A program made the translations under genes and the position numbers. A stretch of DNA of 62,974 nucleotides, the filler included, from Octopus bimaculoides (Eukaryota), in the NCBI RefSeq assembly GCF_001194135.2. It is 6 parts of 6 records of this genome, joined end to end, with 100 filler letters (N's around TTAATTAATTAA, not from the genome) between each part and the next. Parts side by side here need not be neighbours in the genome. Positions count along the whole stretch, not along the records: positions 4,444 to 14,438 come from NC_069000.1; 5 more parts are not named here. The stretch is one strand, 5' to 3'. This document shows, piece by piece, positions 3,905-14,438 of the stretch (its first letter is position 1; every line of letters begins with the position of its first letter). Below the pieces are notes generated by a model. It saw only the letters and a program-made list of their open reading frames with translations, ran no database searches and was not told the origin of the DNA.

Positions 3905-4783
3905 GATACACACATATACATGCATACACACACTCACACATATATCATTGTATGGATACGTGTGTGATTGTATGTTTATATCTAATGCATGTGTGAGTAC
4001 AGGCAGAGAGAGAATTTGGCACTACTTTTAATAAATACTGATTTGATATTGTGTTATTTCATTATATAAGCACATCTTTTGACATAACATAGAAAAAGAC
4101 CATGTGCATATTGTTCAATTCTTCTACTAAAAATAGTGCAATGGCTTATGCTATTAGACCTTTCACTCACCAGATTTCAAGCTGGGCTCAAACTTATCCT
4201 TTCTCATCAACATTTTGTCTCTTACAATCCATATAGACCATATGCAGATCACATGTTACATATTTATACATAAATACCTGCTTATAGATAAATATGTGTG
4301 TTTGCACATATGTCTATATATGTATATATATATATATATATATNNNNNNNNNNNNNNNNNNNNNNNNNNNNNNNNNNNNNNNNNNNNTTAATTAATTAAN
4401 NNNNNNNNNNNNNNNNNNNNNNNNNNNNNNNNNNNNNNNNNNNTTGAATGAAGTTAAAGAAATCAAGTGTAAAACATCTTTATGAATGTATTGAATTATA
4501 TCGTCATGTGACTCATAAAGTGCACATGTAATGACGGCATTATATTATCTCCCTTAGATCGTAAAACAACCACATGCATTATCTCCCTTGCAGTTGCGAA
4601 TCTTTTAACATTAATATTCATACGCAATTATCTGTCATCACAACAAACTGTTTAAAACAGTTACAAAACGATTTATTATGTATGTTTAAAACGTATATAC
4701 AAAAACCACAACTCACGCACGTTGGTGTCTTCCTATATACATGCATGTGTGTGTGTGTACATACAAGAGTTAAAGACTAGAGT

Positions 4784-5138
4784 AGATCCGAGCTACATAT
4801 GTTTCATAGCGAACGGAACTTTGAGAGTGGTAAATATCCAAGTGAGGGGTATATCGCAGGCTAATCATCAGGCGAAAGGAATTTTGATTACATGAAAGTT
4901 TACACTGTCGCAAGGAGACACATGTATTAACGTAGGAGATTCACAAGGAGGTACATGAAAACACACGGTAGGTTCGATCGAATCTGCCGTGTGCTGTCAT
5001 GTACCTCCTTCCGACAATGTAAACTTTCATTTAATCAAAATACCCTTTGACTGACGAGCAGCCTGCGCTATAACCCTCGCTTGAATATTTACCACTTCCC
5101 AGGTTCCGTTCGTTATGAAACATGTGTTGCCCGGATCT
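4784..5138. repeat. Long imperfect palindrome / fold-back (MITE-like) element
   Basis: 4784-4977 is the reverse complement of 4978-5138 about the centre TTCGA|TCGAA, roughly 84% identical by manual alignment, apart from a 33-nt insert (4911-4943) in the left arm bounded by repeated CAAGGAG. Confidence 0.85.
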
Positions 5139-6541
5139 GATCTCTTCAATTCCTTCACTCTTGTATTCTTATTTGCATACCTGGCAACCCTGGTTGCCTA
5201 CCGTGAAATATAAAAAGAATTTTTTTTTCAGCTTATCGTATTTTGATAGCAAAAAAATCCGCAACCTTCCGTCTCAATAAACCACTATTTCCCCTGAAAG
5301 TCGTTTTTTTAATATTTATTACGGACTACTTGAAACTTACTTTCTTCCTACATCTCGATCTATATATAAATATACCTCGACCTATATATAACCTACCAGT
5401 TGCGTACTGGGGTCGATTTAATCGACTGGACCCCTTCCCCAAAATTTCGGGCCTTGTGCCTAGAGTAGAAAATAATGTACACCTTTATCTTCATGGTGCG
5501 GGCAATGTCATGGCAACTCGGAGATTAGAAGACTTAATAAAAGTCAATGCGGTGCCGGGGTAAGTAAAGTCCTTGATGTACTTTAGCGTCTCTGCGTGTA
5601 CAGTCACTGGCTACTCGGGGTCTCTCGATCCGTTAGAAGATCTTGATGAGACGAAACATGTCTCATGCACAAGAAAACCGGTCCACGATGAGTCGTATGT
5701 TTTCAATACACACTCACACACACACATACATACACATACACACACACTCACACATATATATATATATATGCTCCTACTGTCCGTCGCTGGTCGACGTTGC
5801 GTGTGTATATGTTGTGTGCGCCGTGTGTGTATGTATGTATGTATGTGTGCGCGCACACACACATGAATGTATGCATGAGAACGAAACACCACTGAAGCAA
5901 AATACATATACGTACGCATATTCTATGAATATATCCATAGAATATACGGCCCTAATAGGTCTCTCTCTCTCTATCTGTTTATTTATCTATCTATCTATCT
6001 ATCTACCTCACTCACTCTCACACCCTTAAACCACTTAAATTCCCTCTTTCAGTCACTCAGTCCCCTCCTCTCTCATTAGTTCTTAGTCTTTCTCTTCTAT
6101 GTATTATCTTTTCTCACGAAACACTCGACCCTTTTATTAATTTGTCTGTTAAACCAAACCAGGGCAGTCAGATGAATGTATGAAAAAAAACCTGTTTTCT
6201 TCATATTTTTCTTCCTTTCTCTTTTGTTCCCATCACACCCGTCTATACATTTGTACTTATTTATATACTTTTCTAAATCTGGAATTTTTGGAAACAAAAG
6301 AGTTCAGTTTCAGATGAAAGAATTCGAAATAAAACCAAATCTCACGTATTTATTACATTTTAATTACGGTTTTTTTTTTTGTGTTAGTTGTTACGTATTG
6401 AACCACTCCATTTATAACATTCACTCCGATACTCCAGTCGATACTGGATTTGTACATATCCGTTAATTAACTTCGTTAACTAATAATATAATTAGTCACG
6501 AAGAACTATCGCCAAGCATTTATATTTTATTCGGATCAAAC

Positions 6542-6665
6542 ATGACGTCTCGTGGTTATATTACTGTTGGTGAAGGGTCGTCTTGGCGATCTTCAGGTTT
6601 GCCAGCCAAACTGTTGATGTCGATGATGATGATGATACCGATGCTGTCTCCTTACACTTCAGCCA
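6542..6665 (+). CDS. Coding exon 1: N-terminus / putative signal peptide MTSRGYITVGEGSSWRSSGLPAKLLMSMMMMIPMLSPYTSA
   Basis: ATG in CAAACATG context; open for 41 codons + 1 nt; ends at a perfect GTAAGT donor (6666) in phase 1. The hydrophobic Met/Leu-rich stretch ends in T-S-A (small residues at -3/-1). Below the ORF-track length cutoff. Confidence 0.72.
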
Positions 6666-9600
6666 GTAAGTAAAACACAATAAATTTATTTTCTCAACTC
6701 TTAGCTTCTTTCTCTCTTCACCCCTCACGATGGACACTGAATCTTGGGGTCCTTAATGTTAGTCCAGTCGATCCCTCTTCAAAAGTGACTCGGCTGATTT
6801 CTTCCAGAAAGAAAGTAGAGACTAATCGATCCAGTTCGGGACTGGTATATTACTTATCTACTGCACAAGATAAATCTGAACTCAAAAGGACTTAAATTTA
6901 AAGGGCAGAATCCCTCTCCCCTATTCCCAGAACAAATACTTCTAAAGACTCCACAAACACGTCATTCCCATTTCAGGTTAATATATTGTTATATTATCAC
7001 CCAGTAAGTGAGAGATGCGGGGTTCAATTTCCATCACTTACCCTCTTCTTCTTCTTTCATTACGGATTGTGTAACATGATGAACAAAGAAACGAAAGATC
7101 TGAGAAATCGAACGCATTTGATAATCGATGACAGCCAGTAATATTTCTGTAATAACGCAAAACTGAACTAAAAGATATTTTTTCTATTCTATAATAATCT
7201 GTTACAAAATAAGAGGAAAGGTCATTTCTGGACTGTTAATGTATTGAAGACACGGTGTTGTAACTTCGAACTGTGAATACCCATCACTTATTCCTTCATT
7301 TATTTTCTTGAGATTCTTATATTTTATACACCGTAAATTATGATTATTATAAAAATGTTTTAATATTTTAATTTTTCACCCATTCTACTATTTCCCAACT
7401 TACTAAAACTCTCTCCTTCCTTGGTCTATATTTCTGAAACATTTTCAAAATTATATATTTCAAATATCATTGATTTCAATTTTATCAAAAACATTTTTTC
7501 CAAAATTTCAATTTTCTCTACTTCAACTCCTCTTTTTGTNNNNNNNNNNGTGGGGGGGGGGTCTTCAAAAATTTGGCGAATCCTATAATAGACCCTAATA
7601 TGGAATGTCCCAATATGTCTTTTGTTTCTTCTCTTTCATTAATCCCACAGCAACACAAACAATGTTGGTAGACGCATTTGCATCCGGGTCAATGAATCGT
7701 GATGTGCGGAAACTTCTGGGTTTTATCCAACACCGTTGACCATATTGTATGACACCCACAGATGGCAGACCACACACTCACACACACTCATACACACGCA
7801 CACTTACACACGCACACATATATACACGCACACACACACACACGCACACACTCATGCACACTCACACTCACACAAATACACACACAAACACACACACACA
7901 CATACACATATTCTCACAAACACTCACACACATACTCATACATACACATACGCATTCACACATACGTACACACTCACACACCCACTCACTTTCACATACA
8001 CACACATTTATTCAATGCTGGAATGTGAAGTATGTTCTTCGGGGGGATGCAGGTATGGCGAACCTGGAATAATAAATTTGCAGGTCTCAAAGTTTTTCAC
8101 ATTTCAGCGATTTTGTCGGGGTTTTTTGATTGCCTTTATGATGGCCCATCCTAACATGACGGCAGACTACTTCTTTCAATATCAATATAAATTACTTACA
8201 ACCTTTAGCTAACCTCGAAAACAAATGACGATTTTTTAAATATTTCTTTAGGTCACCGTCCCAGAATTAGCAATATTCGGGTAGTTGGTAGGCTTAACGT
8301 TTCTATTCGTAACTTGGCATTTGTTTCTGTGAATATGAAGACGATGTTCAACGCCATTAGAATGCACTGCTGGTTTGTTAGTCCGAAAGATGAGGAATGG
8401 TTGATCATTTTATGCAGGAAGATGGAAGATATCAATCGGTGTAGAACAAAGCAAGGAGAATGAATTGGGAGCAAACAAGAAGTACAGACGACAGAAAATA
8501 ATCAGTACATATTCAGAGTTTACATAAGCTTCTCAGTAGGCTTAGCATAGCGATGAACGCCTTATGGCAGTCTTTCATGTAAAACAAAGATCAAGGAAAT
8601 AAATACAATAACAGCACGACCACATCCTCTTTCTCATTGATCCACAGTACAATGAAATAATGAAAAGAGGCAGTAACAGTAAAGTGTAGTATTATAGCTA
8701 GTGGGTATGAGTTCAATTCCTGAGTTAGTCAATCTCACGCAACGTCTTTGGGTAAAACATTTCAAAAAGCATCAAAATTAATAAAGAGACTAATTAATAA
8801 ATAGAAAATCGCTGATTCAGGTGGAGAACAGAGCGAGGATGATCTAACCCCATGGACTAAATAAAGGGTACGTTACCAGGTTTTGGAAACATTACTTAAT
8901 AGGTGAGGTACCTGAAGATGACCGGACAATACAACAGCCGAAATATTGTGACTATAACAAGCAAGATGAAGAGGACGTTAGTTCAAATATGTATAAAATA
9001 ATGGTAATTCTTGGTCTCAGAAATTCAAACAAAATTTTTTCTCGTTTGTTATGCTATGATTAAATTTTCTTTTCGTTCTTCTTTTCCATCACCCTCTTTC
9101 TTCTTTTCTCTTTTTTAATCCTTCTTTTTCCCCTCTTCTTCTTTCTCTTATACCGTTTCTTTTTCTCCAACTATACTGATTTTTTTCTGTCGTCTGTACT
9201 TCCGGTTTATTCCTTATTCATTCTCTTTGCTTTGTTCTACACCGACTGCAATTTTTCTCCAAATTTTAATAAATCTTCCCTCTTCCATTTTTTCCTTTAT
9301 AGCTATTCAAATGATCGGCTTCTCACCTGCTGATGGTTTCACTATTGGAGCACCAAATGCAATGAACATTTTATGTTCATACGCAACGACGAATTTCATT
9401 TCGTTCCGCCTTATGCAAAACAACAATTCCGTTGTAGAGATGCAATACAACCAAATATCTGAGCGCTTTGAAACTACAAAGAACGAGAAAGATTTCAGAT
9501 GTACTTTAACCCGATCTCCATTAAATTCTGGTATGGTTAGTTGTAAAAAATGGAACCTCACTTGCAAGGATGTGGCATCATACAGATGTCTTTTATCAGA

Positions 9601-11724
9601 CACAGATATTTCCAATCCAGAGCTTCTGAAAGGTCAGTACATCATCCACGTCATTAGTTTTCACTATTCAACATTATTAGTTTTTCGAACTAAGACGACG
9701 AGCTGGCAGAACCGTTAGGACACCGGGTGAAATGCGTCTGCTGCTACGTTCTGAGTTCAAATTCCGCCGAGGTTGACTTTGCCTTTCACCCTTTCGAGGG
9801 TCAATTAAATAAGTACCAGTTACGCACTGGGGTCGATGTAATCCCCACTCCCAAATTTGAGGCTTCGTTCTTCCAGTAGAAAGGATTATAACTTAAACTT
9901 CACAAAATTTATTATTATTATTATTATTAGTATTATTAATAATACTAATACTAATAATAATAATAATAAGGTGGCAATCTAACAGAGTCGTTAGCGTGTC
10001 GGATAAAATGCTTAGCGGTATTTCGTCCGTCTTCGTTCTGAGTTCAAATTCCGCCGCAGTCGACTTTAGTTTTTCATCCTACACTATACTGCACACATAC
10101 ATCCATGCATCCATACTTATATGTGTGTGTATTTGCGTGTATGTATTTATATGTATGTATGTATACATACGTCTTTATGTAGGTATTGTCGCCATGTAAA
10201 CTGTGCTCTACCCTGCTCTAGCAATTCTTTATAAAACAAGAGAGTGAAACCCTTTGAAAATAGCATCTTTAAGTTTCAGAGATGTTCTTCATTTAAAATT
10301 TGTATCAACACTATAAGTTTGTATCAATGCATCCAGCGAATATGTTATTGTGTAATTATTCTTCTAACGTTTATTTTATTTTCAGTGAAATCTTCTATTA
10401 AGAGCCTGGCACTTGCCGAGAATGACTTTCGAATGAGCAGGACAGCTACATTCAAATGCACTGCATATGCTGCATTGCCTTTTCCTGAGGAAATCGTCTT
10501 TCAGTGGACAGTAACAAACAGTAGAAAGGAAGTTGTGAATGAAGACAGAGTGAAAGTTTGGGGTTCTGACAAATGTTATACTGAAGTAACTTCATCCTAT
10601 AAATACGCTGTGCGATTTGATAGCTTTGCGTCCCCTTCAATTATTTCTTGTACAGTATTTAACCAGACACGTACTAATGACGTCAACCCGCCTATGCCAA
10701 GTAAGCAAATATTTTTTATGTTCTATTGCCCACTGTATTTATTCATTTGTGGAGGCGCAATGGCCCAGCGGTTAGGGCAGCGGATCGCGGTTTCGATTCC
10801 CAAACCGGGCATTGTGAGTGTTTATTGAGCGAAAACACCTAAAGCTCCACGAGGCTCTGGCAGGGGATGGTGGCGAACCCTGCTGTACTCTTCCACCACA
10901 ACTTTCTCTCACTCTTACTTCCTGTTTCTGTTGTGCCTGTAATTCAAAGGGTCAACTTTGTCACACTGTGTCACGCTGAATATCCCCGAAAACTACGTTA
11001 AGGGTACACGTGTGACTTTGGAGTGCTCAGCCACTTGCACGTTAATTTCACGAGCAGGCTGTTCCGTTGACCGGATCAACTGGAACCCTCGACGTCGTAA
11101 GCGACGGAGTGCCAACAACAACAACAATTTATTTATTTTTCTCTCAATATATGGAGACGATTGTTATAGGCTACGTGTTGTGTTACGTGCAGTTTGTCTC
11201 TTTGCTGACAGAAAACATTGTTACATTCTTAAGATGTTTATGGTTGAGTGGTTAAATATTGAATGCATTTATAAAACTCTTTGTCTGAAACGGCAGCAGC
11301 AATTGGGTCACATATATGATTGAAACGAACCACTTATTCTTGTATATGTAGCTCATCTGACGTAATTGCTCTTAGTAAATATTTCTAGCCAATGGGAGCA
11401 GTTTGAAAGTAACACGTGGTTTCTTAGTTTGCGTAACAGAATAGAGTTTCTCGTTACGTTTGAAATCACAGAATGCTGGACGTCAGCAGACTGCTATTTT
11501 AAACTAATATATTAAATAAATTAAATATAGTGGACATATATACATCTACGCATATAAGTACATATATAGATAAAAAGAATATATTCATAAATATTTTCCC
11601 TAACTCATCTATATTTTATCTTACAGAGGAATCTGTTGATGCTTCAGCCGGTCTACAGTACCGCAAATGGGTTTTGGTTGTTAATCTCATTCTTCTACTT
11701 CTGACTGTTTCAATTTCTTGCTAG
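6542..11724 (+). CDS. Spliced 4-exon gene encoding a 288-aa predicted GPI-anchored protein with two Ig-like domains (signal peptide - V-like Ig - C2-like Ig - GPI signal)
   Basis: Exons of 124+330+315+98 nt sum to 867 nt (288 codons + TAG) with no internal stop. All three introns are GT..AG and phase 1, and the junction codons read A|CT (Thr), G|TG (Val), A|AG (Lys). Symmetric phase 1-1 exons carrying one domain each are typical of Ig-superfamily genes. No named orthologue recognised. Confidence 0.88.
7770..8007. repeat. Degenerate (CA)n microsatellite in intron 1
   Basis: Directly visible. Confidence 0.9.
8252..8578 (+). pseudogene. Possible decayed Ig-like cassette exon in intron 1
   Basis: Acceptor TTTTTTAAATATTTCTTTAG; phase-1 frame open for 69 codons (HRPRISNIRVVGRL...MHCWFVSPKDEEW...); GTAAAA donor at 8579 gives 327 nt, phase 1-1. 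Three in-frame stops (8461, 8548, 8554). Confidence 0.33.
8830..9010 (+). repeat. Penelope-type repeat relic with hammerhead-like motif (family 1) in intron 1
   Basis: CTGAAGA...GAAATATTGTG...AACAAGCAAGATGA..GGAC...; its 3' half matches the reverse complement of ~30075-30140. Confidence 0.5.
9303..9632 (+). CDS. Coding exon 2: V-like Ig domain (TIQMIGFSPADGFTIGAPNAMNILCSY...KWNLTCKDVASYRCLLSDTDISNPELLK)
   Basis: Long pyrimidine tract ending TTTATAG (AG 9301-9302); donor G|GTCAGT at 9633; 330 nt, phase 1-1. B-strand ILCSY and F-strand DVASYRC (D-x-[GA]-x-Y-x-C motif); lies inside ORF 9227..9718. Confidence 0.9.
9694..10080 (+). mobile_element. SINE family B copies in intron 2 (9694-9887 and truncated 9970-10080) separated by (ATT)n/(TAA)n
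   Basis: GAGCTGGCAGAACCGTTAG...GTTCTGAGTTCAAATTCCGCCGAGG.TGACTTTGCCTTTCA...AAGTACCAGTTACGCACTGGGGTCGAT, shared with many copies in the window. Confidence 0.8.
10386..10700 (+). CDS. Coding exon 3: C2-like Ig domain (VKSSIKSLALAE...TATFKCTAYAALPFPEEIVFQWTV...SIISCTVFNQTRTNDVNPPMP)
   Basis: Acceptor TTTTATTTTCAG (AG 10384-10385); donor A|GTAAGC at 10701; 315 nt, phase 1-1. Cys...Trp...Cys spacing of an Ig fold; lies inside ORF 10244..10828. Confidence 0.9.
10751..11128 (+). mobile_element. tRNA-headed SINE family C copy in intron 3, (AAC)n tail
   Basis: Head GGAGGCGCAATGGCCCAGCGGTTAG (A-box-like) and GGTTTCGATTCC (B-box-like). The body matches the reverse complement of the copy at ~57073-57378. 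Confidence 0.8.
11627..11724 (+). CDS. Terminal coding exon: GPI-anchor-like signal KESVDASAGLQYRKWVLVVNLILLLLTVSISC*
   Basis: Acceptor TTTTATCTTACAG (AG 11625-11626) in phase 1. A small-residue cluster (DASAG), a short polar spacer and then 17 mostly hydrophobic residues running to TAG, with no cytoplasmic tail. Confidence 0.85.
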
Positions 11725-11892
11725 CATCAACTCGTTTTGCACAAAGTTAACAATGAAGGTTTGTAAAGATAAATTTCTTTTTCGTTTTGTTTCTCCTTCT
11801 TTTCTTTCTTCTCCAGCATTTTCTTTCTCCTCCTCCTTATCAGTTTATCGGTCCGCACCCTCCTTCTCTCTCTCTCTCTCTCTCTGTATATG

Positions 11893-11948
<56 letters not shown>

Positions 11949-11955
11949 ATACAGA

Positions 11956-11961
11956 AATAAA
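11956..11961 (+). terminator. Candidate polyadenylation signal AATAAA of the Ig gene
   Basis: First AATAAA about 230 nt after the stop codon; a second lies at 12059-12064. Common hexamer in AT-rich DNA. Confidence 0.4.
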
Positions 11962-12019
11962 TTTATTTCTCAAACGCGTGATAATGCTATAAGGATAAAT
12001 TATAATGCAGAAAAATACG

Positions 12020-13240
12020 TTGCCGGCCAGCCACAGACATCGGCCGTTTAATATATCAAATAAACTAGTTATACAAAAACACCACTCTCTGCCTGGATGA
12101 TGGCCTCGTTAAATCCACAGAAAAGACTGTTTCCAAGGATCAAGCGGTTTCCCTTTGTTTTACACATCACATACAAAATGGCAGCCTTCAACGTGTCTGT
12201 GATAATAAGAAACAACCAATAAGTCCCTCTCTCTCTCACTCCCTTCTTCCTCCTTTTCCCCCTCTGTCTTTCTCCCTTCTCTCTTCCACTGTCTCCCTCT
12301 CTCTATCACTCTCTGTCTCTCTCGCTCTCTTTCTCTATCGTCTTCTCTGTTCCCCTCTCTTCTTATTTCTCATTCTTTCTTCCTTCTCTCCGTCTCTCTC
12401 CTTCTCACCCTTTTTCTTCTTCCATATCTCTCCATATCTTCTCTTCCCTGTCTTTCTCTCTCAACAACTCTCCAGATGTATTAGTCCTGGTGGGTGGTCA
12501 CGTATTTATGAATATTCCCGACCAACAACTGCTGTGACACAAGAACCATGTTGACGAGAATTCAGTCATGCCAAAAACACATGCCGCGTTTTTCTTGGGC
12601 AATCCACCCGCCGAGGGTTTAAAAGTGACCAACAAGCCGATGTAGGTGGTGGCATTGATTCTGGGGTCCAGAGGGAAAGAGTAAATTTTCAAGATATAAT
12701 CCTCATCCCTCACCTCACTACGACCACCAGAGACAATACCGCGAATACAACATTGGGGACTGAACCTACCCATCTCCCGAACATCTGGTTTGCTTTTTGG
12801 TTTTGTTGGAACTTGTTCTTACTTGGGAAGAACCAAAGAACGATTGGTTACCCATATTGCACCAGTTTATTCAAAAGCTCTTCGATCAAGTCTTTCAGTT
12901 CTCCCAAACTCACTAGAAGCCTATACTCATCCTCAGCAACACAAAATACCCTCGTGGGCCTAGTTTTACATTGACACTAAACACATATCAATATGCCTCT
13001 GTATATTTATATATTCTTTGGTGGTATTTCTCTCAAACCCGAGTCTCGTCCCAGTCGAAAGGTTGGTTACTTCCCCTGTTGGTGTGTTCTTCAGTGAGTT
13101 TTCTTTTATCATTCTGTTCTTTGATGTTTGTCCCTCTTAGATTTAGGTTCCACCTACCGACACCACTAGTCTGAGAGACACCATCGAAAGTTGCCCAAAC
13201 CTCCATTCAAAGGATTCCCCCATTTATTTATTTACTTATC
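12020..13240 (-). mobile_element. Highly degenerate 3' fragment of a Tx1/L1-like LINE, interrupted by a pyrimidine tract (~12225-12470)
   Basis: Minus-strand remnants PLNGGLG (~13200) and DCPR...TEF..WFLC (~12540-12605) resemble the GGLG motif and C-terminal zinc knuckle of the Tx1-like ORF2 at 37.8-38.7 kb; many stops and frameshifts. Confidence 0.4.

Positions 13241-14403: not shown

Positions 14404-14438
<35 letters not shown>

What the first reader, a model, noticed from the sequence alone, without database searches (positions are those of the whole stretch)
6542..11724. Hand-assembled two-Ig-domain, GPI-anchored cell-surface protein of no recognisable named family
Seen: four exons splice in frame (all phase 1) into 288 aa, with a signal peptide, V-like and C2-like Ig domains, three N-glycosylation sequons (NNS, NLT, NQT) and a GPI-type tail. 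Known: small GPI-linked Ig proteins (IgLON, Dpr/DIP, contactin types) act in neural wiring, and lineage-specific Ig proteins act in invertebrate immunity and allorecognition. I do not see close similarity to those families. Inference: a lineage-specific cephalopod recognition molecule, possibly one member of an expanded or diversifying family.
Basis: partly seen in the sequence, partly recalled or inferred. Interest (0 to 1): 0.8.

Follow-up and report, generated by a model that had tools for sequence, protein, structure and literature searches.

The report
Octopod-specific two-Ig-domain GPI-type surface protein gene

Summary
The four-exon model (6542-6665, 9303-9632, 10386-10700, 11627-11724, + strand) reproduces exactly. 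All introns are GT/AG and phase 1, giving 288 aa plus a stop codon. The protein is 100% identical to NCBI's "uncharacterized protein LOC106882738" of Octopus bimaculoides. The 10-N gap lies in intron 1. Both of its flanks align in the same order and orientation to the gapless O. vulgaris orthologue, so the reading frame is unaffected.

Pfam finds nothing in the protein. AlphaFold2 predicts two beta-sandwich domains, and Foldseek's best matches are V+C immunoglobulin modules (butyrophilins, Fab chains; E about 1e-8). Domain 1 is V-like. Domain 2 is Ig-like, but neither C1-set nor C2-set can be assigned. The C-terminus has the layout of a GPI-attachment signal; this rests on my own heuristic only.

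A profile search finds about 40 family representatives, and every one identified is from an octopod (Octopus species and Argonauta). O. bimaculoides has at least 15 loci, and every one with an assembly position in the look-up lies on this one chromosome, some in tandem. Eight cysteines are near-invariant, which implies an interdomain disulfide. Pairwise dN/dS is 0.70-0.79. This shows rapid evolution, but positive selection is not shown. Function and expression were not tested. No paper mentions the family. A strongly conserved 160-nt non-coding block lies in intron 3.

The parts
6542..6665 (+). Exon 1 (124 nt, ends in phase 1). It encodes M1-A41: a long conserved n-region (res 1-23), a Met/Leu-rich hydrophobic core (24-35) and YTSA|T, the likely signal-peptidase site at the exon boundary.
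   Evidence: Searches give the sequence, the donor gtaagt and the Kozak A at -3. One search shows the hydrophobic window at residues 22-35. predicts a helix at 22-35. One search shows shorter family members starting at the equivalent of M26-M28 and ending in YTSA. Exon 1 is the best-conserved coding part (87% aa identity to the orthologue). Cleavage is inferred from the -3/-1 rule and was not run through a predictor.
6666..9302 (+). Intron 1 (2637 nt as assembled). It contains the 10-N assembly gap at 7540-7549, a CA-rich array at 7771-8006 and an inverted-repeat pair at 8426-8507 / 9174-9255.
   Evidence: Both gap flanks are colinear with the gapless O. vulgaris intron 1. tblastn finds no family-like exon in the intron.
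9303..9632 (+). Exon 2 (330 nt, phase 1-1), which is domain 1: a V-like Ig domain (res 42-151). It carries C66...DVASYRC137 (spacing 71), the extra cysteines C108, C122 and C129, and the sequons N82 and N126.
   Evidence: The AF2 model gives pLDDT 85-90 here and nine strands. Foldseek aligns the whole model on V+C modules. The cysteines are near-invariant across the family.
10386..10700 (+). Exon 3 (315 nt, phase 1-1), which is domain 2: a divergent Ig-like beta-sandwich (res 152-256). It carries C176, W192 and C240 (spacing 64), the extra cysteine C215 and the sequon N244.
   Evidence: The D2-only AF2 model has pLDDT 87.9 and pTM 0.78, with seven strands and a short E-F helix. Foldseek matches are weak (E>=1e-3). 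The family profile aligns this domain with the light-chain constant domain.
11341..11500 (.). Conserved non-coding block in intron 3, 127-286 nt upstream of the tail exon. It is invariant or nearly so across six gene copies and contains TGACGTAA, CCAAT and CACGTG.
   Evidence: The central 100 nt are 98% identical to the orthologue, against about 84% for the rest of the introns. Mean column identity is 88% over six copies from paralogues that are only 48-71% identical as proteins. There is no open frame. There is no Rfam match that means anything and no compensatory pair.
11627..11724 (+). Exon 4 (98 nt including TAG at 11722-11724). It encodes the stalk and a GPI-type C-terminal signal: the small-residue cluster D261-A-S-A-G265 (candidate omega site), the spacer LQYRK, and an 18-residue hydrophobic stretch W271-C288 that runs to the last residue.
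   Evidence: The pattern is conserved in the subfamily (S-A-x-x-G ... Y-x-K-W-[IV]-L-x-x-N-L-I-L-L). Other family members instead have a TM segment plus a cytoplasmic tail (P0015, P0027). GPI attachment itself is an inference.
11956..12064 (+). Two AATAAA hexamers (11956 and 12059), which are candidate poly(A) signals 232 and 335 nt after the stop. A (TA)30 array at 11887-11946 lies between the stop and these hexamers.
   Evidence: These are motif occurrences only. There is no transcript evidence.

Best explanation
This is an intact four-exon Octopus bimaculoides gene (LOC106882738) with the classic immunoglobulin-superfamily layout. The exons are signal-peptide, V-like domain, second Ig-like domain and tail, and every intron is phase 1.

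The inferred pathway of the product is as follows:
- It enters the ER through a long signal peptide, cleaved after YTSA41.
- It folds into two tandem beta-sandwich domains carrying three N-glycans.
- Its 18-residue C-terminal hydrophobic peptide is exchanged for a GPI anchor at the D261-G265 small-residue cluster.
- The mature form is a glycoprotein of about 222 residues on the outer leaflet of the plasma membrane.

Eight near-invariant cysteines suggest four disulfides:
- C66-C137, the canonical pair in domain 1.
- C176-C240, the canonical pair in domain 2.
- C108-C122, across the D-E hairpin of domain 1.
- C129-C215, by elimination, which would staple domain 1 to domain 2 and make a rigid V-C rod presenting the membrane-distal V-like face.

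The protein has no cytoplasmic part. It would therefore act as a surface ligand, or as the binding subunit of a receptor that signals through a cis partner. Transmembrane paralogues with cytoplasmic tails exist.

The gene is one member of an octopod-restricted, tandemly duplicated, rapidly evolving family. That profile is typical of recognition genes facing a changing partner (immune, self/non-self, gamete or environmental recognition) rather than of conserved neural-wiring genes.

Shown: the gene structure, the identity with the RefSeq model, the predicted fold, the family size and its taxonomic range, and the evolutionary rate.
Inferred: signal-peptide cleavage, GPI anchoring, the disulfide map and the recognition role.
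For: Gene model: with 100% identity to the NCBI model. The exon structure is conserved in the orthologue and in a paralogue.

Fold: AF2 gives pLDDT 77 overall and 85-90 in the domains. The top Foldseek hits are BTN3A/BTN2A1 IgV-IgC ectodomains and Fab chains, over 225-255 aligned columns with E 1.5e-8 to 8e-7. The family profile matches kappa light chains from the V-domain F strand through the constant domain (E 6e-6). That alignment puts C129 on rabbit-kappa C80 and C215 on C171; that C80-C171 is rabbit kappa's natural interdomain disulfide is from my own knowledge.

Cysteines: all eight are near-invariant in about 50 family sequences. C108 and C122 are in register across the predicted hairpin 106-113/117-125.

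Membrane topology: the only two hydrophobic segments are 22-35 and 271-288. The second reaches the C-terminus and follows a small-residue cluster and a 5-residue spacer.

Family: 50 representatives at E<=1e-3 and 40 at E<=1e-10, and every one identified is from Octopus or Argonauta. A neighbouring paralogue fragment lies 4.6 kb downstream, tail to tail. Tandem units are present in L002, L004 and L005.

Rate: dN/dS is 0.74, 0.70 and 0.79 in three pairwise comparisons. dN is 0.164, against an intron divergence of about 0.18.
Against: - This protein gives no Pfam Ig hit even at E<=10.
- Domain 2 modelled alone matches solved structures only weakly, and the matches are a mixed bag of Ig-like sandwiches (GH2 domains, ASF1, C-lambda).
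- The signal-peptide core is Met-rich and only moderately hydrophobic (mean KD about 1.9), and the n-region is unusually long.
- No dedicated signal-peptide or GPI predictor could be run.
- No model coordinates were available, so Cys-Cys distances were not measured.
- No transcript, tissue or binding data exist here, and no paper was found.
- A dN/dS near 1 is also what relaxed constraint would give.
Confidence: 0.72

Rival explanations
1. The C-terminal hydrophobic stretch is a true transmembrane anchor, making this a type I protein with essentially no cytoplasmic tail, and is not a GPI-attachment signal.
For: The segment is 18 residues, predicted helical (261-287) and very hydrophobic (mean KD up to 3.3). 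Most paralogue tails end in a single Arg (AISR), which could act as a minimal stop-transfer residue. Other family members are clearly TM proteins (P0015, P0027).
Against: No residues follow the hydrophobic stretch in this protein. The conserved small-residue cluster and short polar spacer just upstream fit the omega-site rule (the rule is from my own knowledge). An Asn (N276) sits in the middle of the segment. The true TM members have RKK stop-transfer motifs and long tails, which this protein lacks.
Confidence: 0.15
2. It is a neural wiring or adhesion molecule that works like IgLON, Dpr/DIP or CD2-type proteins. In this reading it forms homophilic or heterophilic trans pairs between neurons, and the family expansion supplies a surface code, analogous to the octopus protocadherin expansion.
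For: It is a small GPI-type Ig protein with a membrane-distal V-like domain. Tandem clustered expansion resembles octopus clustered protocadherins (PMC10084454, read). Having many paralogues with variable domain 1 fits a code.
Against: No sequence relationship to these families was found. There is no expression evidence. The evolutionary rate (dN/dS 0.7-0.8) is much higher than is usual for wiring receptors (own knowledge). The family includes secreted and mucin-stalked forms.
Confidence: 0.2
3. It is a decaying or functionless duplicate in a gene cluster. The open frame would survive only because the duplication is recent, and the RefSeq model would be a prediction without real expression.
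For: dN/dS is close to 1 in parts (domain 1 at 1.2 against the orthologue, domain 2 at 1.1 against the paralogue). Many neighbouring family models are fragments or merged models. No transcript evidence was seen here.
Against: The ORF and all six splice sites are intact in both O. bimaculoides and O. vulgaris after dS of about 0.22. All eight cysteines and the framework residues are retained. Whole-gene dN/dS against the paralogue has a bootstrap interval below 1 (0.52-0.97). Exon 1 and an intronic block are under clear constraint.
Confidence: 0.07

Closest known systems
Butyrophilin / B7-type IgV-IgC ectodomains (BTN3A1/2, BTN2A1)
   Same: These are the best structural matches to the whole model (8zhr_F E 1.5e-8; 4f8q TMt 0.52). 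Both have a membrane-distal V-type domain followed by a constant-type domain on the cell surface, and both belong to clustered multigene families with roles in immune recognition (own knowledge).
   Different: Identity is only 11-14%. Butyrophilins are vertebrate type I transmembrane proteins, most with a cytoplasmic B30.2 domain. This protein has no TM-plus-tail and no B30.2, and it has extra cysteines that those proteins lack.
Antibody kappa light chain V-C module, especially rabbit kappa with the C80-C171 interdomain disulfide
   Same: It is the best sequence-profile match in the PDB (E 6e-6). The alignment is colinear from the V-domain F strand (xLxCeDxAxYxC) through the constant domain. 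The family's two 'odd' cysteines fall on the positions of the rabbit interdomain disulfide.
   Different: The match is weak and partly driven by the cysteines themselves. This protein has no J-like segment, no evidence of rearrangement and no pairing partner, and it is membrane-anchored. The resemblance is most likely convergent or generic to the superfamily.
CD2/SLAM-family GPI-linked members (CD48, CD58 GPI isoform)
   Same: The architecture is the same: signal peptide, V-like domain, second Ig domain and GPI anchor. Both are small adhesion or recognition ligands from tandem gene clusters (own knowledge).
   Different: CD2-family V domains lack the canonical B-F disulfide, which this protein has (C66-C137). 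None of them appears among the PDB profile matches at E<=0.01. They are vertebrate-only.
Drosophila Dpr (two Ig domains) and DIP, and IgLON (three Ig domains, GPI)
   Same: They are small Ig-only surface proteins, often lipid-anchored, and they occur in expanded families that form recognition codes.
   Different: No similarity was detected. Pfam I-set, V-set and ig models do not hit this protein. The family profile search retrieved no such protein among the hits that were identified, and the PDB profile search shows only light chains. IgLONs and DIPs have three domains. Those families are conserved across wide taxonomic ranges and evolve slowly.

Membership tests
Immunoglobulin superfamily (Ig-like fold) | Two-sheet beta-sandwich with a B-strand/F-strand disulfide and a C-strand aromatic residue | tested here: met
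   AF2 predicts two sandwiches. Foldseek returns 1211 PDB matches at E<=1e-3, led by V+C Ig modules. The C66/C137 and C176/C240 pairs, F76 and W192 are conserved.
Immunoglobulin superfamily (Ig-like fold) | Match to a curated Ig-domain sequence model (Pfam ig, I-set, V-set, Ig_2, Ig_3 or C2-set) | tested here: not met
   The window protein gives no Pfam family even at E<=10. Among 29 family members only 1-3 give weak hits (best: ig at 4.8e-5).
V-set Ig domain (domain 1) | About 65-75 residues between the cysteines, extra C'/C'' strands, and a D-x-[GA]-x-Y-x-C motif at strand F | tested here: met
   The spacing is 71. The motif is DVASYRC (131-137). Nine predicted strands lie between residues 42 and 152. 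The curated V-set model does not hit, so this is V-like by structure only.
C2-set (or C1-set) Ig domain (domain 2) | Seven-strand constant-type topology assignable to one set by its sheet arrangement or by close structural neighbours | tested here: inconclusive
   Seven strands are predicted at pLDDT 87.9. The best PDB matches reach only E 1e-3 to 1e-2 and TM 0.4-0.6, and they mix GH2 Ig-like domains, ASF1 and C-lambda. The sequence profile aligns with C-kappa, which is C1-set. No coordinates were available to read the sheet topology.
GPI-anchored proteins | N-terminal signal peptide, plus a C-terminal signal made of small omega/omega+2 residues, a 5-10 residue polar spacer and a 15-20 residue hydrophobic end with no cytoplasmic residues | tested here: met
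   My own heuristic scan finds D261-A-S-A-G265, the spacer LQYRK, and the hydrophobic stretch W271-C288 running to the last residue. It also finds a hydrophobic core at 22-35 with YTSA|T. NetGPI, PredGPI and SignalP were not available.
GPI-anchored proteins | Actual lipid anchoring (PI-PLC release, anchor mass spectrometry) | not testable with these tools
   This needs an experiment.
IgLON | Three I-set/C2-type Ig domains plus GPI, with recognisable orthologues across bilaterians | tested here: not met
   The protein has only two domains. No I-set hit. No IgLON appears among the identified profile hits or the PDB profile matches.
Dpr / DIP | Sequence membership of the arthropod Dpr (2 Ig) or DIP (3 Ig) families | tested here: not met
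   The domain count equals that of Dpr. However, no arthropod protein appears among the hits that were identified; beyond the octopod hits, those identified were generic IgSF (obscurin, a snail CADM2, a mussel peroxidasin-like protein). The PDB profile search shows only light chains.
Contactin | Six Ig domains plus four FN3 domains plus GPI | tested here: not met
   The whole protein is 288 aa with two domains.
Butyrophilin / B7 | IgV-IgC ectodomain, then a transmembrane helix and (for butyrophilins) a cytoplasmic B30.2 domain | tested here: not met
   The ectodomain fold matches, but the protein ends at the hydrophobic tail with no cytoplasmic domain. Identity is 11-14%.

The most novel reading that the evidence does not exclude
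The family is an octopod invention: a clustered, rapidly diversifying V-C receptor/ligand system, with GPI-anchored, transmembrane and secreted forms, used for self/non-self or conspecific recognition. Possible settings are haemocyte immunity, gamete recognition, or the skin-sucker self-recognition of octopus arms. The V-like domain 1 would be the variable binding face, and a light-chain-like interdomain disulfide would have evolved independently of vertebrate antibodies. The highly conserved intron-3 block would be a shared control element that sets which tail is used, or coordinates expression of the cluster.
Probability: 0.1. Interest if true: 0.75.

Novelty: new member of a known kind. Interest (0 to 1): 0.4.

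Why it matters
Cephalopods lack antibodies, and little is known about their surface recognition molecules beyond the protocadherin expansion. This analysis defines an undescribed, octopod-restricted Ig family. It has a distinctive eight-cysteine signature, tandem genomic clusters, alternative anchoring modes and a near-neutral evolutionary rate.

That gives concrete candidates for immune, self-recognition or reproductive recognition studies in octopus. It also gives a testable structural prediction (a V-C interdomain disulfide) and a testable regulatory element.

On present evidence, however, this is one more lineage-specific IgSF expansion. Such expansions are common in invertebrates, and the gene itself is already annotated.

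Tried and rejected
- Pfam scan of the protein at E<=10: nothing.
- Single-sequence PDB search: only marginal Ig hits, E 0.08-0.5, spanning the domain boundary. These were not used as evidence.
- Rfam at gathering threshold and a tRNA scan over the whole piece: nothing. The SINE-like repeats are therefore not recognisable tRNA genes.
- Literature searches by LOC identifiers, by UniProt accessions and by topic: no paper on this gene or family. The one relevant review only covers octopus protocadherins.
- D2-only structure search, meant to settle C1-set versus C2-set: the model is confident but the matches are weak and heterogeneous, so the question stays open.
It was re-run without that fragment.
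- Structured-RNA hypothesis for the intron-3 conserved block: z = -2.7 on the + strand, but no compensatory pair, several broken pairs and a positive covariation term. The only Rfam hit was a meaningless mir-297 match at E 0.36. Rejected for lack of support.
- Extra or hidden Ig exons in the introns or near the gap: none found by tblastn with the whole family.
- Positive selection: not demonstrable from pairwise dN/dS, because the intervals include 1.
- Three-Ig and chimeric family models (P0004, P0005): the first is an annotation merge of neighbouring four-exon units. The second appears to be one, judged from the sequences and from the adjacency of the two genes in O. vulgaris. Neither is taken as a real architecture.
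Full report
**1. Observation**

The exons are 6542-6665, 9303-9632, 10386-10700 and 11627-11724 on the + strand. They join to 867 nt, which is 288 codons plus TAG.
- Splice sites: donors are gtaagt, gtcagt and gtaagc. Each acceptor follows a pyrimidine tract. All three introns are phase 1.
- Start codon: the ATG has A at -3, and an in-frame stop lies 26 codons upstream.
- Sequons: N82-N-S, N126-L-T and N244-Q-T are present.

The window piece is identical, base for base, to Octopus bimaculoides assembly GCA_001194135.2, chromosome CM046620.1, at about 43.96 Mb. It is bounded by assembly gaps. The 288-aa product is 100% identical over its full length to NCBI's "uncharacterized protein LOC106882738". 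The hand assembly is therefore correct, but the model was already in RefSeq.

**2. The gap**

N 7540-7549 lies in intron 1, 875 nt after exon 1 and 1754 nt before exon 2. Its true length cannot change the reading frame.

Continuity was tested against the O. vulgaris locus L003, which has no N.
- The whole gene is colinear with that locus.
- The last block left of the gap (7174-7321) maps to L003 11699-11845. The first block right of it (7771-8056) maps to L003 12846-13149, on the same strand.
- The O. vulgaris interval contains no family-like exon.
- The orthologue's exons are 118/330/318/98 nt, all phase 1.
- None of the eight closest proteins has an indel at the exon 1/exon 2 junction.

The two sides of the gap therefore appear to be in the right order and orientation. 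At most a few hundred intronic bases are missing.

**3. What the protein is**

Sequence models are nearly silent. Pfam gives no family at E<=10. A single-sequence PDB search gives only marginal Ig hits.

Structure prediction is clearer. AlphaFold2 on an eight-sequence alignment gives pLDDT 77 overall and 85-90 in two beta-sandwich domains, at residues about 42-151 and 152-256. It also predicts helices at 22-35 and 261-287. Foldseek against the PDB returns 1211 matches at E<=1e-3. The top matches are butyrophilin IgV-IgC ectodomains and Fab chains, aligned over 225-255 columns at E 1.5e-8 to 8e-7 and 11-18% identity.

Domain 1 is V-like for three reasons:
- the cysteine spacing is 71;
- it has the DVASYRC motif at strand F;
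- nine strands are predicted.

Domain 2 was modelled alone and is confident (pLDDT 87.9, pTM 0.78). Its best PDB matches, however, reach only E 1e-3 and TM 0.4-0.6. They mix glycosidase Ig-like domains, ASF1 and C-lambda. It is an Ig-like sandwich with C176, W192 and C240, but I cannot call it C2-set. By sequence profile it aligns best with the C1-set constant domain of kappa chains.

Each domain is one exact phase-1 exon, which is the classic IgSF gene layout.

**4. Cysteines**

The family has eight near-invariant cysteines: 66, 108, 122, 129 and 137 in domain 1, and 176, 215 and 240 in domain 2.
- C66-C137 and C176-C240 are the canonical pairs.
- C108 and C122 face each other in register across the predicted hairpin 106-113/117-125.
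- That leaves C129 and C215, one in each domain.

The family profile's best PDB matches are rabbit and disulfide-engineered kappa light chains (E 6e-6). In those alignments C129 falls on kappa C80 and C215 on C171, the positions of the natural rabbit interdomain disulfide (the rabbit disulfide is from my own knowledge).

I therefore infer an interdomain C129-C215 bond that rigidifies the V-C unit. This is an inference. No coordinates were available to measure distances, and the cysteine matches themselves inflate that alignment score.

**5. Targeting**

The protein has only two hydrophobic segments.

The first is at residues 22-35. It is Met/Leu-rich, with mean KD of about 1.9, and is followed by YTSA|T at the exon 1 boundary. 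Shorter family members start at the equivalent of M26-M28 with an ordinary 16-18-residue signal peptide ending in YTSA. The 23-residue n-region here is conserved down to Argonauta, so it is probably translated.

The second segment is W271-C288. It runs to the very last residue and is preceded by D261-A-S-A-G265 and the spacer LQYRK. This is the textbook layout of a GPI-attachment signal (the rule is from my own knowledge). The pattern is conserved in the subfamily. Other family members have a TM segment followed by RKK and a cytoplasmic tail (P0015, Argonauta P0027), a Thr-rich mucin-like stalk (P0011, P0023), or no anchor at all.

Signal cleavage and GPI anchoring remain predictions.

**6. 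Family and range**

The word-indexed search found only eight proteins, all from Octopus. A profile search of 1.84 billion representatives found 50 at E<=1e-3 and 40 at E<=1e-10.

Every family hit I could identify is from O. bimaculoides, O. vulgaris, O. sinensis or Argonauta hians. Beyond about 1e-10 there are only generic multi-Ig proteins: obscurin, a snail CADM2 and a mussel peroxidasin-like protein.

O. bimaculoides has at least 15 loci, in runs of nearly consecutive LOC numbers:
- LOC106882738 (this gene)
- LOC106878948, LOC106878952 and LOC106878954
- LOC106870302
- LOC128250265, LOC128250266 and LOC128250267
- LOC106880708, LOC106880713, LOC106880714 and LOC106880715
- LOC106882073
- LOC106883640
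- the UniProt-only entry A0A0L8G5R9 (P0019)

Eleven of the thirteen loci for which the look-up gave an assembly contig sit on the same 47.9-Mb chromosome record. LOC106878954 lies there too, in L002. LOC106883640 is listed on a 10.7-kb contig.

Local arrangement:
- A second member's domain-2 and tail exons (P0033) lie 4.6 kb beyond this gene's stop, tail to tail, just outside the window piece.
- LOC106878948 and LOC106878954 are 8 kb apart, about 561 kb upstream.
- In O. vulgaris the orthologue has a paralogue ending 15.6 kb upstream.
- Another O. vulgaris locus holds two complete four-exon units that the annotation fused into a "three-Ig" protein.

No paper mentions these genes.

**7. Rate of evolution**

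I used Nei-Gojobori estimates with a codon bootstrap.

| Comparison | Region | dN/dS | 95% interval |
|---|---|---|---|
| Window gene vs O. vulgaris orthologue | all | 0.74 | 0.50-1.09 |
| | exon 1 | 0.50 | |
| | domain 1 | 1.20 | 0.63-2.85 |
| | domain 2 | 0.50 | |
| | tail | 0.71 | |
| Window gene vs paralogue LOC106878948 | all | 0.70 | 0.52-0.97 |
| O. vulgaris orthologue vs that paralogue | all | 0.79 | |

For the orthologue pair, dS is 0.22 and dN is 0.164. That dN is close to the intron divergence of about 0.18 implied by roughly 84% intron identity.

The protein thus changes at nearly the neutral rate while keeping its cysteine and aromatic framework, its ORF and its splice sites. This fits a mixture of constrained core and fast or positively selected surface. 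Positive selection itself is not demonstrated.

**8. Mechanism proposed**

A rigid, glycosylated V-C unit is tethered by GPI to the outer leaflet and presents its distal V-like domain. It would act as a ligand, or as the binding part of a receptor that needs a cis partner. Paralogues supply TM or secreted versions.

Lineage restriction, tandem expansion and the high rate point to recognition of a changing partner (immune, self/non-self or gamete) more than to conserved neural wiring. This ranking is an inference with low certainty. The rivals are a TM anchor, a wiring code and a decaying duplicate. They are listed with tests in the Rival explanations section.

**9. Comparison with known families**

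By function and shape the protein resembles butyrophilin/B7 ectodomains, light-chain V-C modules and GPI-linked CD2-family members. It is not a member of any of them, nor of IgLON, Dpr/DIP or contactin. The domain number, the tail or the sequence tests fail in each case (see the membership table).

It is best filed as a new, undescribed family within the immunoglobulin superfamily.

**10. A by-product**

The last 290 nt of intron 3 are conserved in every subfamily copy examined. The block at 11341-11500 is 98% identical to the orthologue over its central 100 nt, and it has 88% mean column identity across six copies whose proteins are only 48-71% identical. It is better conserved than any exon.

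The block has no open frame, no convincing Rfam match and no covariation. It contains TGACGTAA, CCAAT and CACGTG motifs. I regard it as a cis-regulatory or splicing-control element of unknown role.

**11. Verdict**

- The gene is already annotated, but the family is uncharacterised.
- Interest is moderate.

Noticed in passing
window 11341-11500 (intron 3); also L003 18423-18576, L002 13535-13700, L005 29325-29495, L004 36919-37085 and 19350-19505: A non-coding block of about 160 nt just upstream of the tail exon is more conserved than the exons. Its central 100 nt are 98% identical to the O. vulgaris orthologue, and mean column identity is 88% across six paralogous copies. It contains TGACGTAA, CCAAT and CACGTG. 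It has no ORF, no meaningful Rfam hit and no compensatory base pairs. It is probably a shared cis-regulatory or splicing-control element.
   Followed up: partly
L001 19783-20478 (- strand), about 4.6 kb beyond the stop and outside the window piece: The domain-2 and GPI-tail exons of another family member (P0033, 130 aa) lie tail to tail with this gene. Assembly gaps flank them, so the rest of that gene is probably unassembled.
   Followed up: partly
L004 10001-40198, L005 10001-29723 and protein P0005: Public gene models in the cluster are often merges of neighbouring four-exon units. O. vulgaris P0004 ('three Ig') spans two complete units. O. sinensis P0005 appears to join domain 1 of one gene to domain 2 of the next. 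P0008 skips domain 2. Because all introns are phase 1, any exon combination stays in frame, so real read-through or exon-swapped transcripts cannot be excluded.
   Followed up: partly
window 4779-4924 / 4998-5143: A long hairpin-forming inverted repeat lies about 1.4 kb upstream of the start codon. It has 146-nt arms that are 82% complementary, with a 73-nt loop. It is probably a MITE-like element.
   Followed up: no
window 9688-9843, 9950-10080 (intron 2) and 10751-11112 (intron 3): These are interspersed SINE-like repeats with many copies in the O. vulgaris locus. The 362-nt copy in intron 3 is absent from the orthologous O. vulgaris intron, so it was inserted in, or lost from, one lineage. 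ARAGORN and Rfam do not call them tRNA.
   Followed up: partly
window 7771-8006, 11887-11946, 12230-12470, 14406-14438, 5700-5880: Several microsatellites are present. A CA-rich array of about 235 nt sits just right of the assembly gap and is a likely cause of the gap. (TA)30 lies 160 nt after the stop codon. A CT-rich tract lies downstream. (TA)n ends the piece. CA/TG arrays lie upstream.
   Followed up: no
window 8426-8507 / 9174-9255 (intron 1): An inverted repeat pair lies inside intron 1 (82-nt arms, 85% complementary, 666 nt apart). The second arm ends 48 nt before the exon 2 acceptor. It is also present in O. vulgaris. It could bring the two ends of that stretch together in the pre-mRNA, or it could be a transposon remnant.
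   Followed up: no
window 11627-11701, alternative frame of exon 4: The O. sinensis isoform model P0005 reads the tail exon in another frame, giving a different, non-GPI C-terminus. In the window that frame is open from 11627 and stops at TGA 11699-11701. No suitable alternative acceptor was found here, so this may be an annotation artefact.
   Followed up: partly
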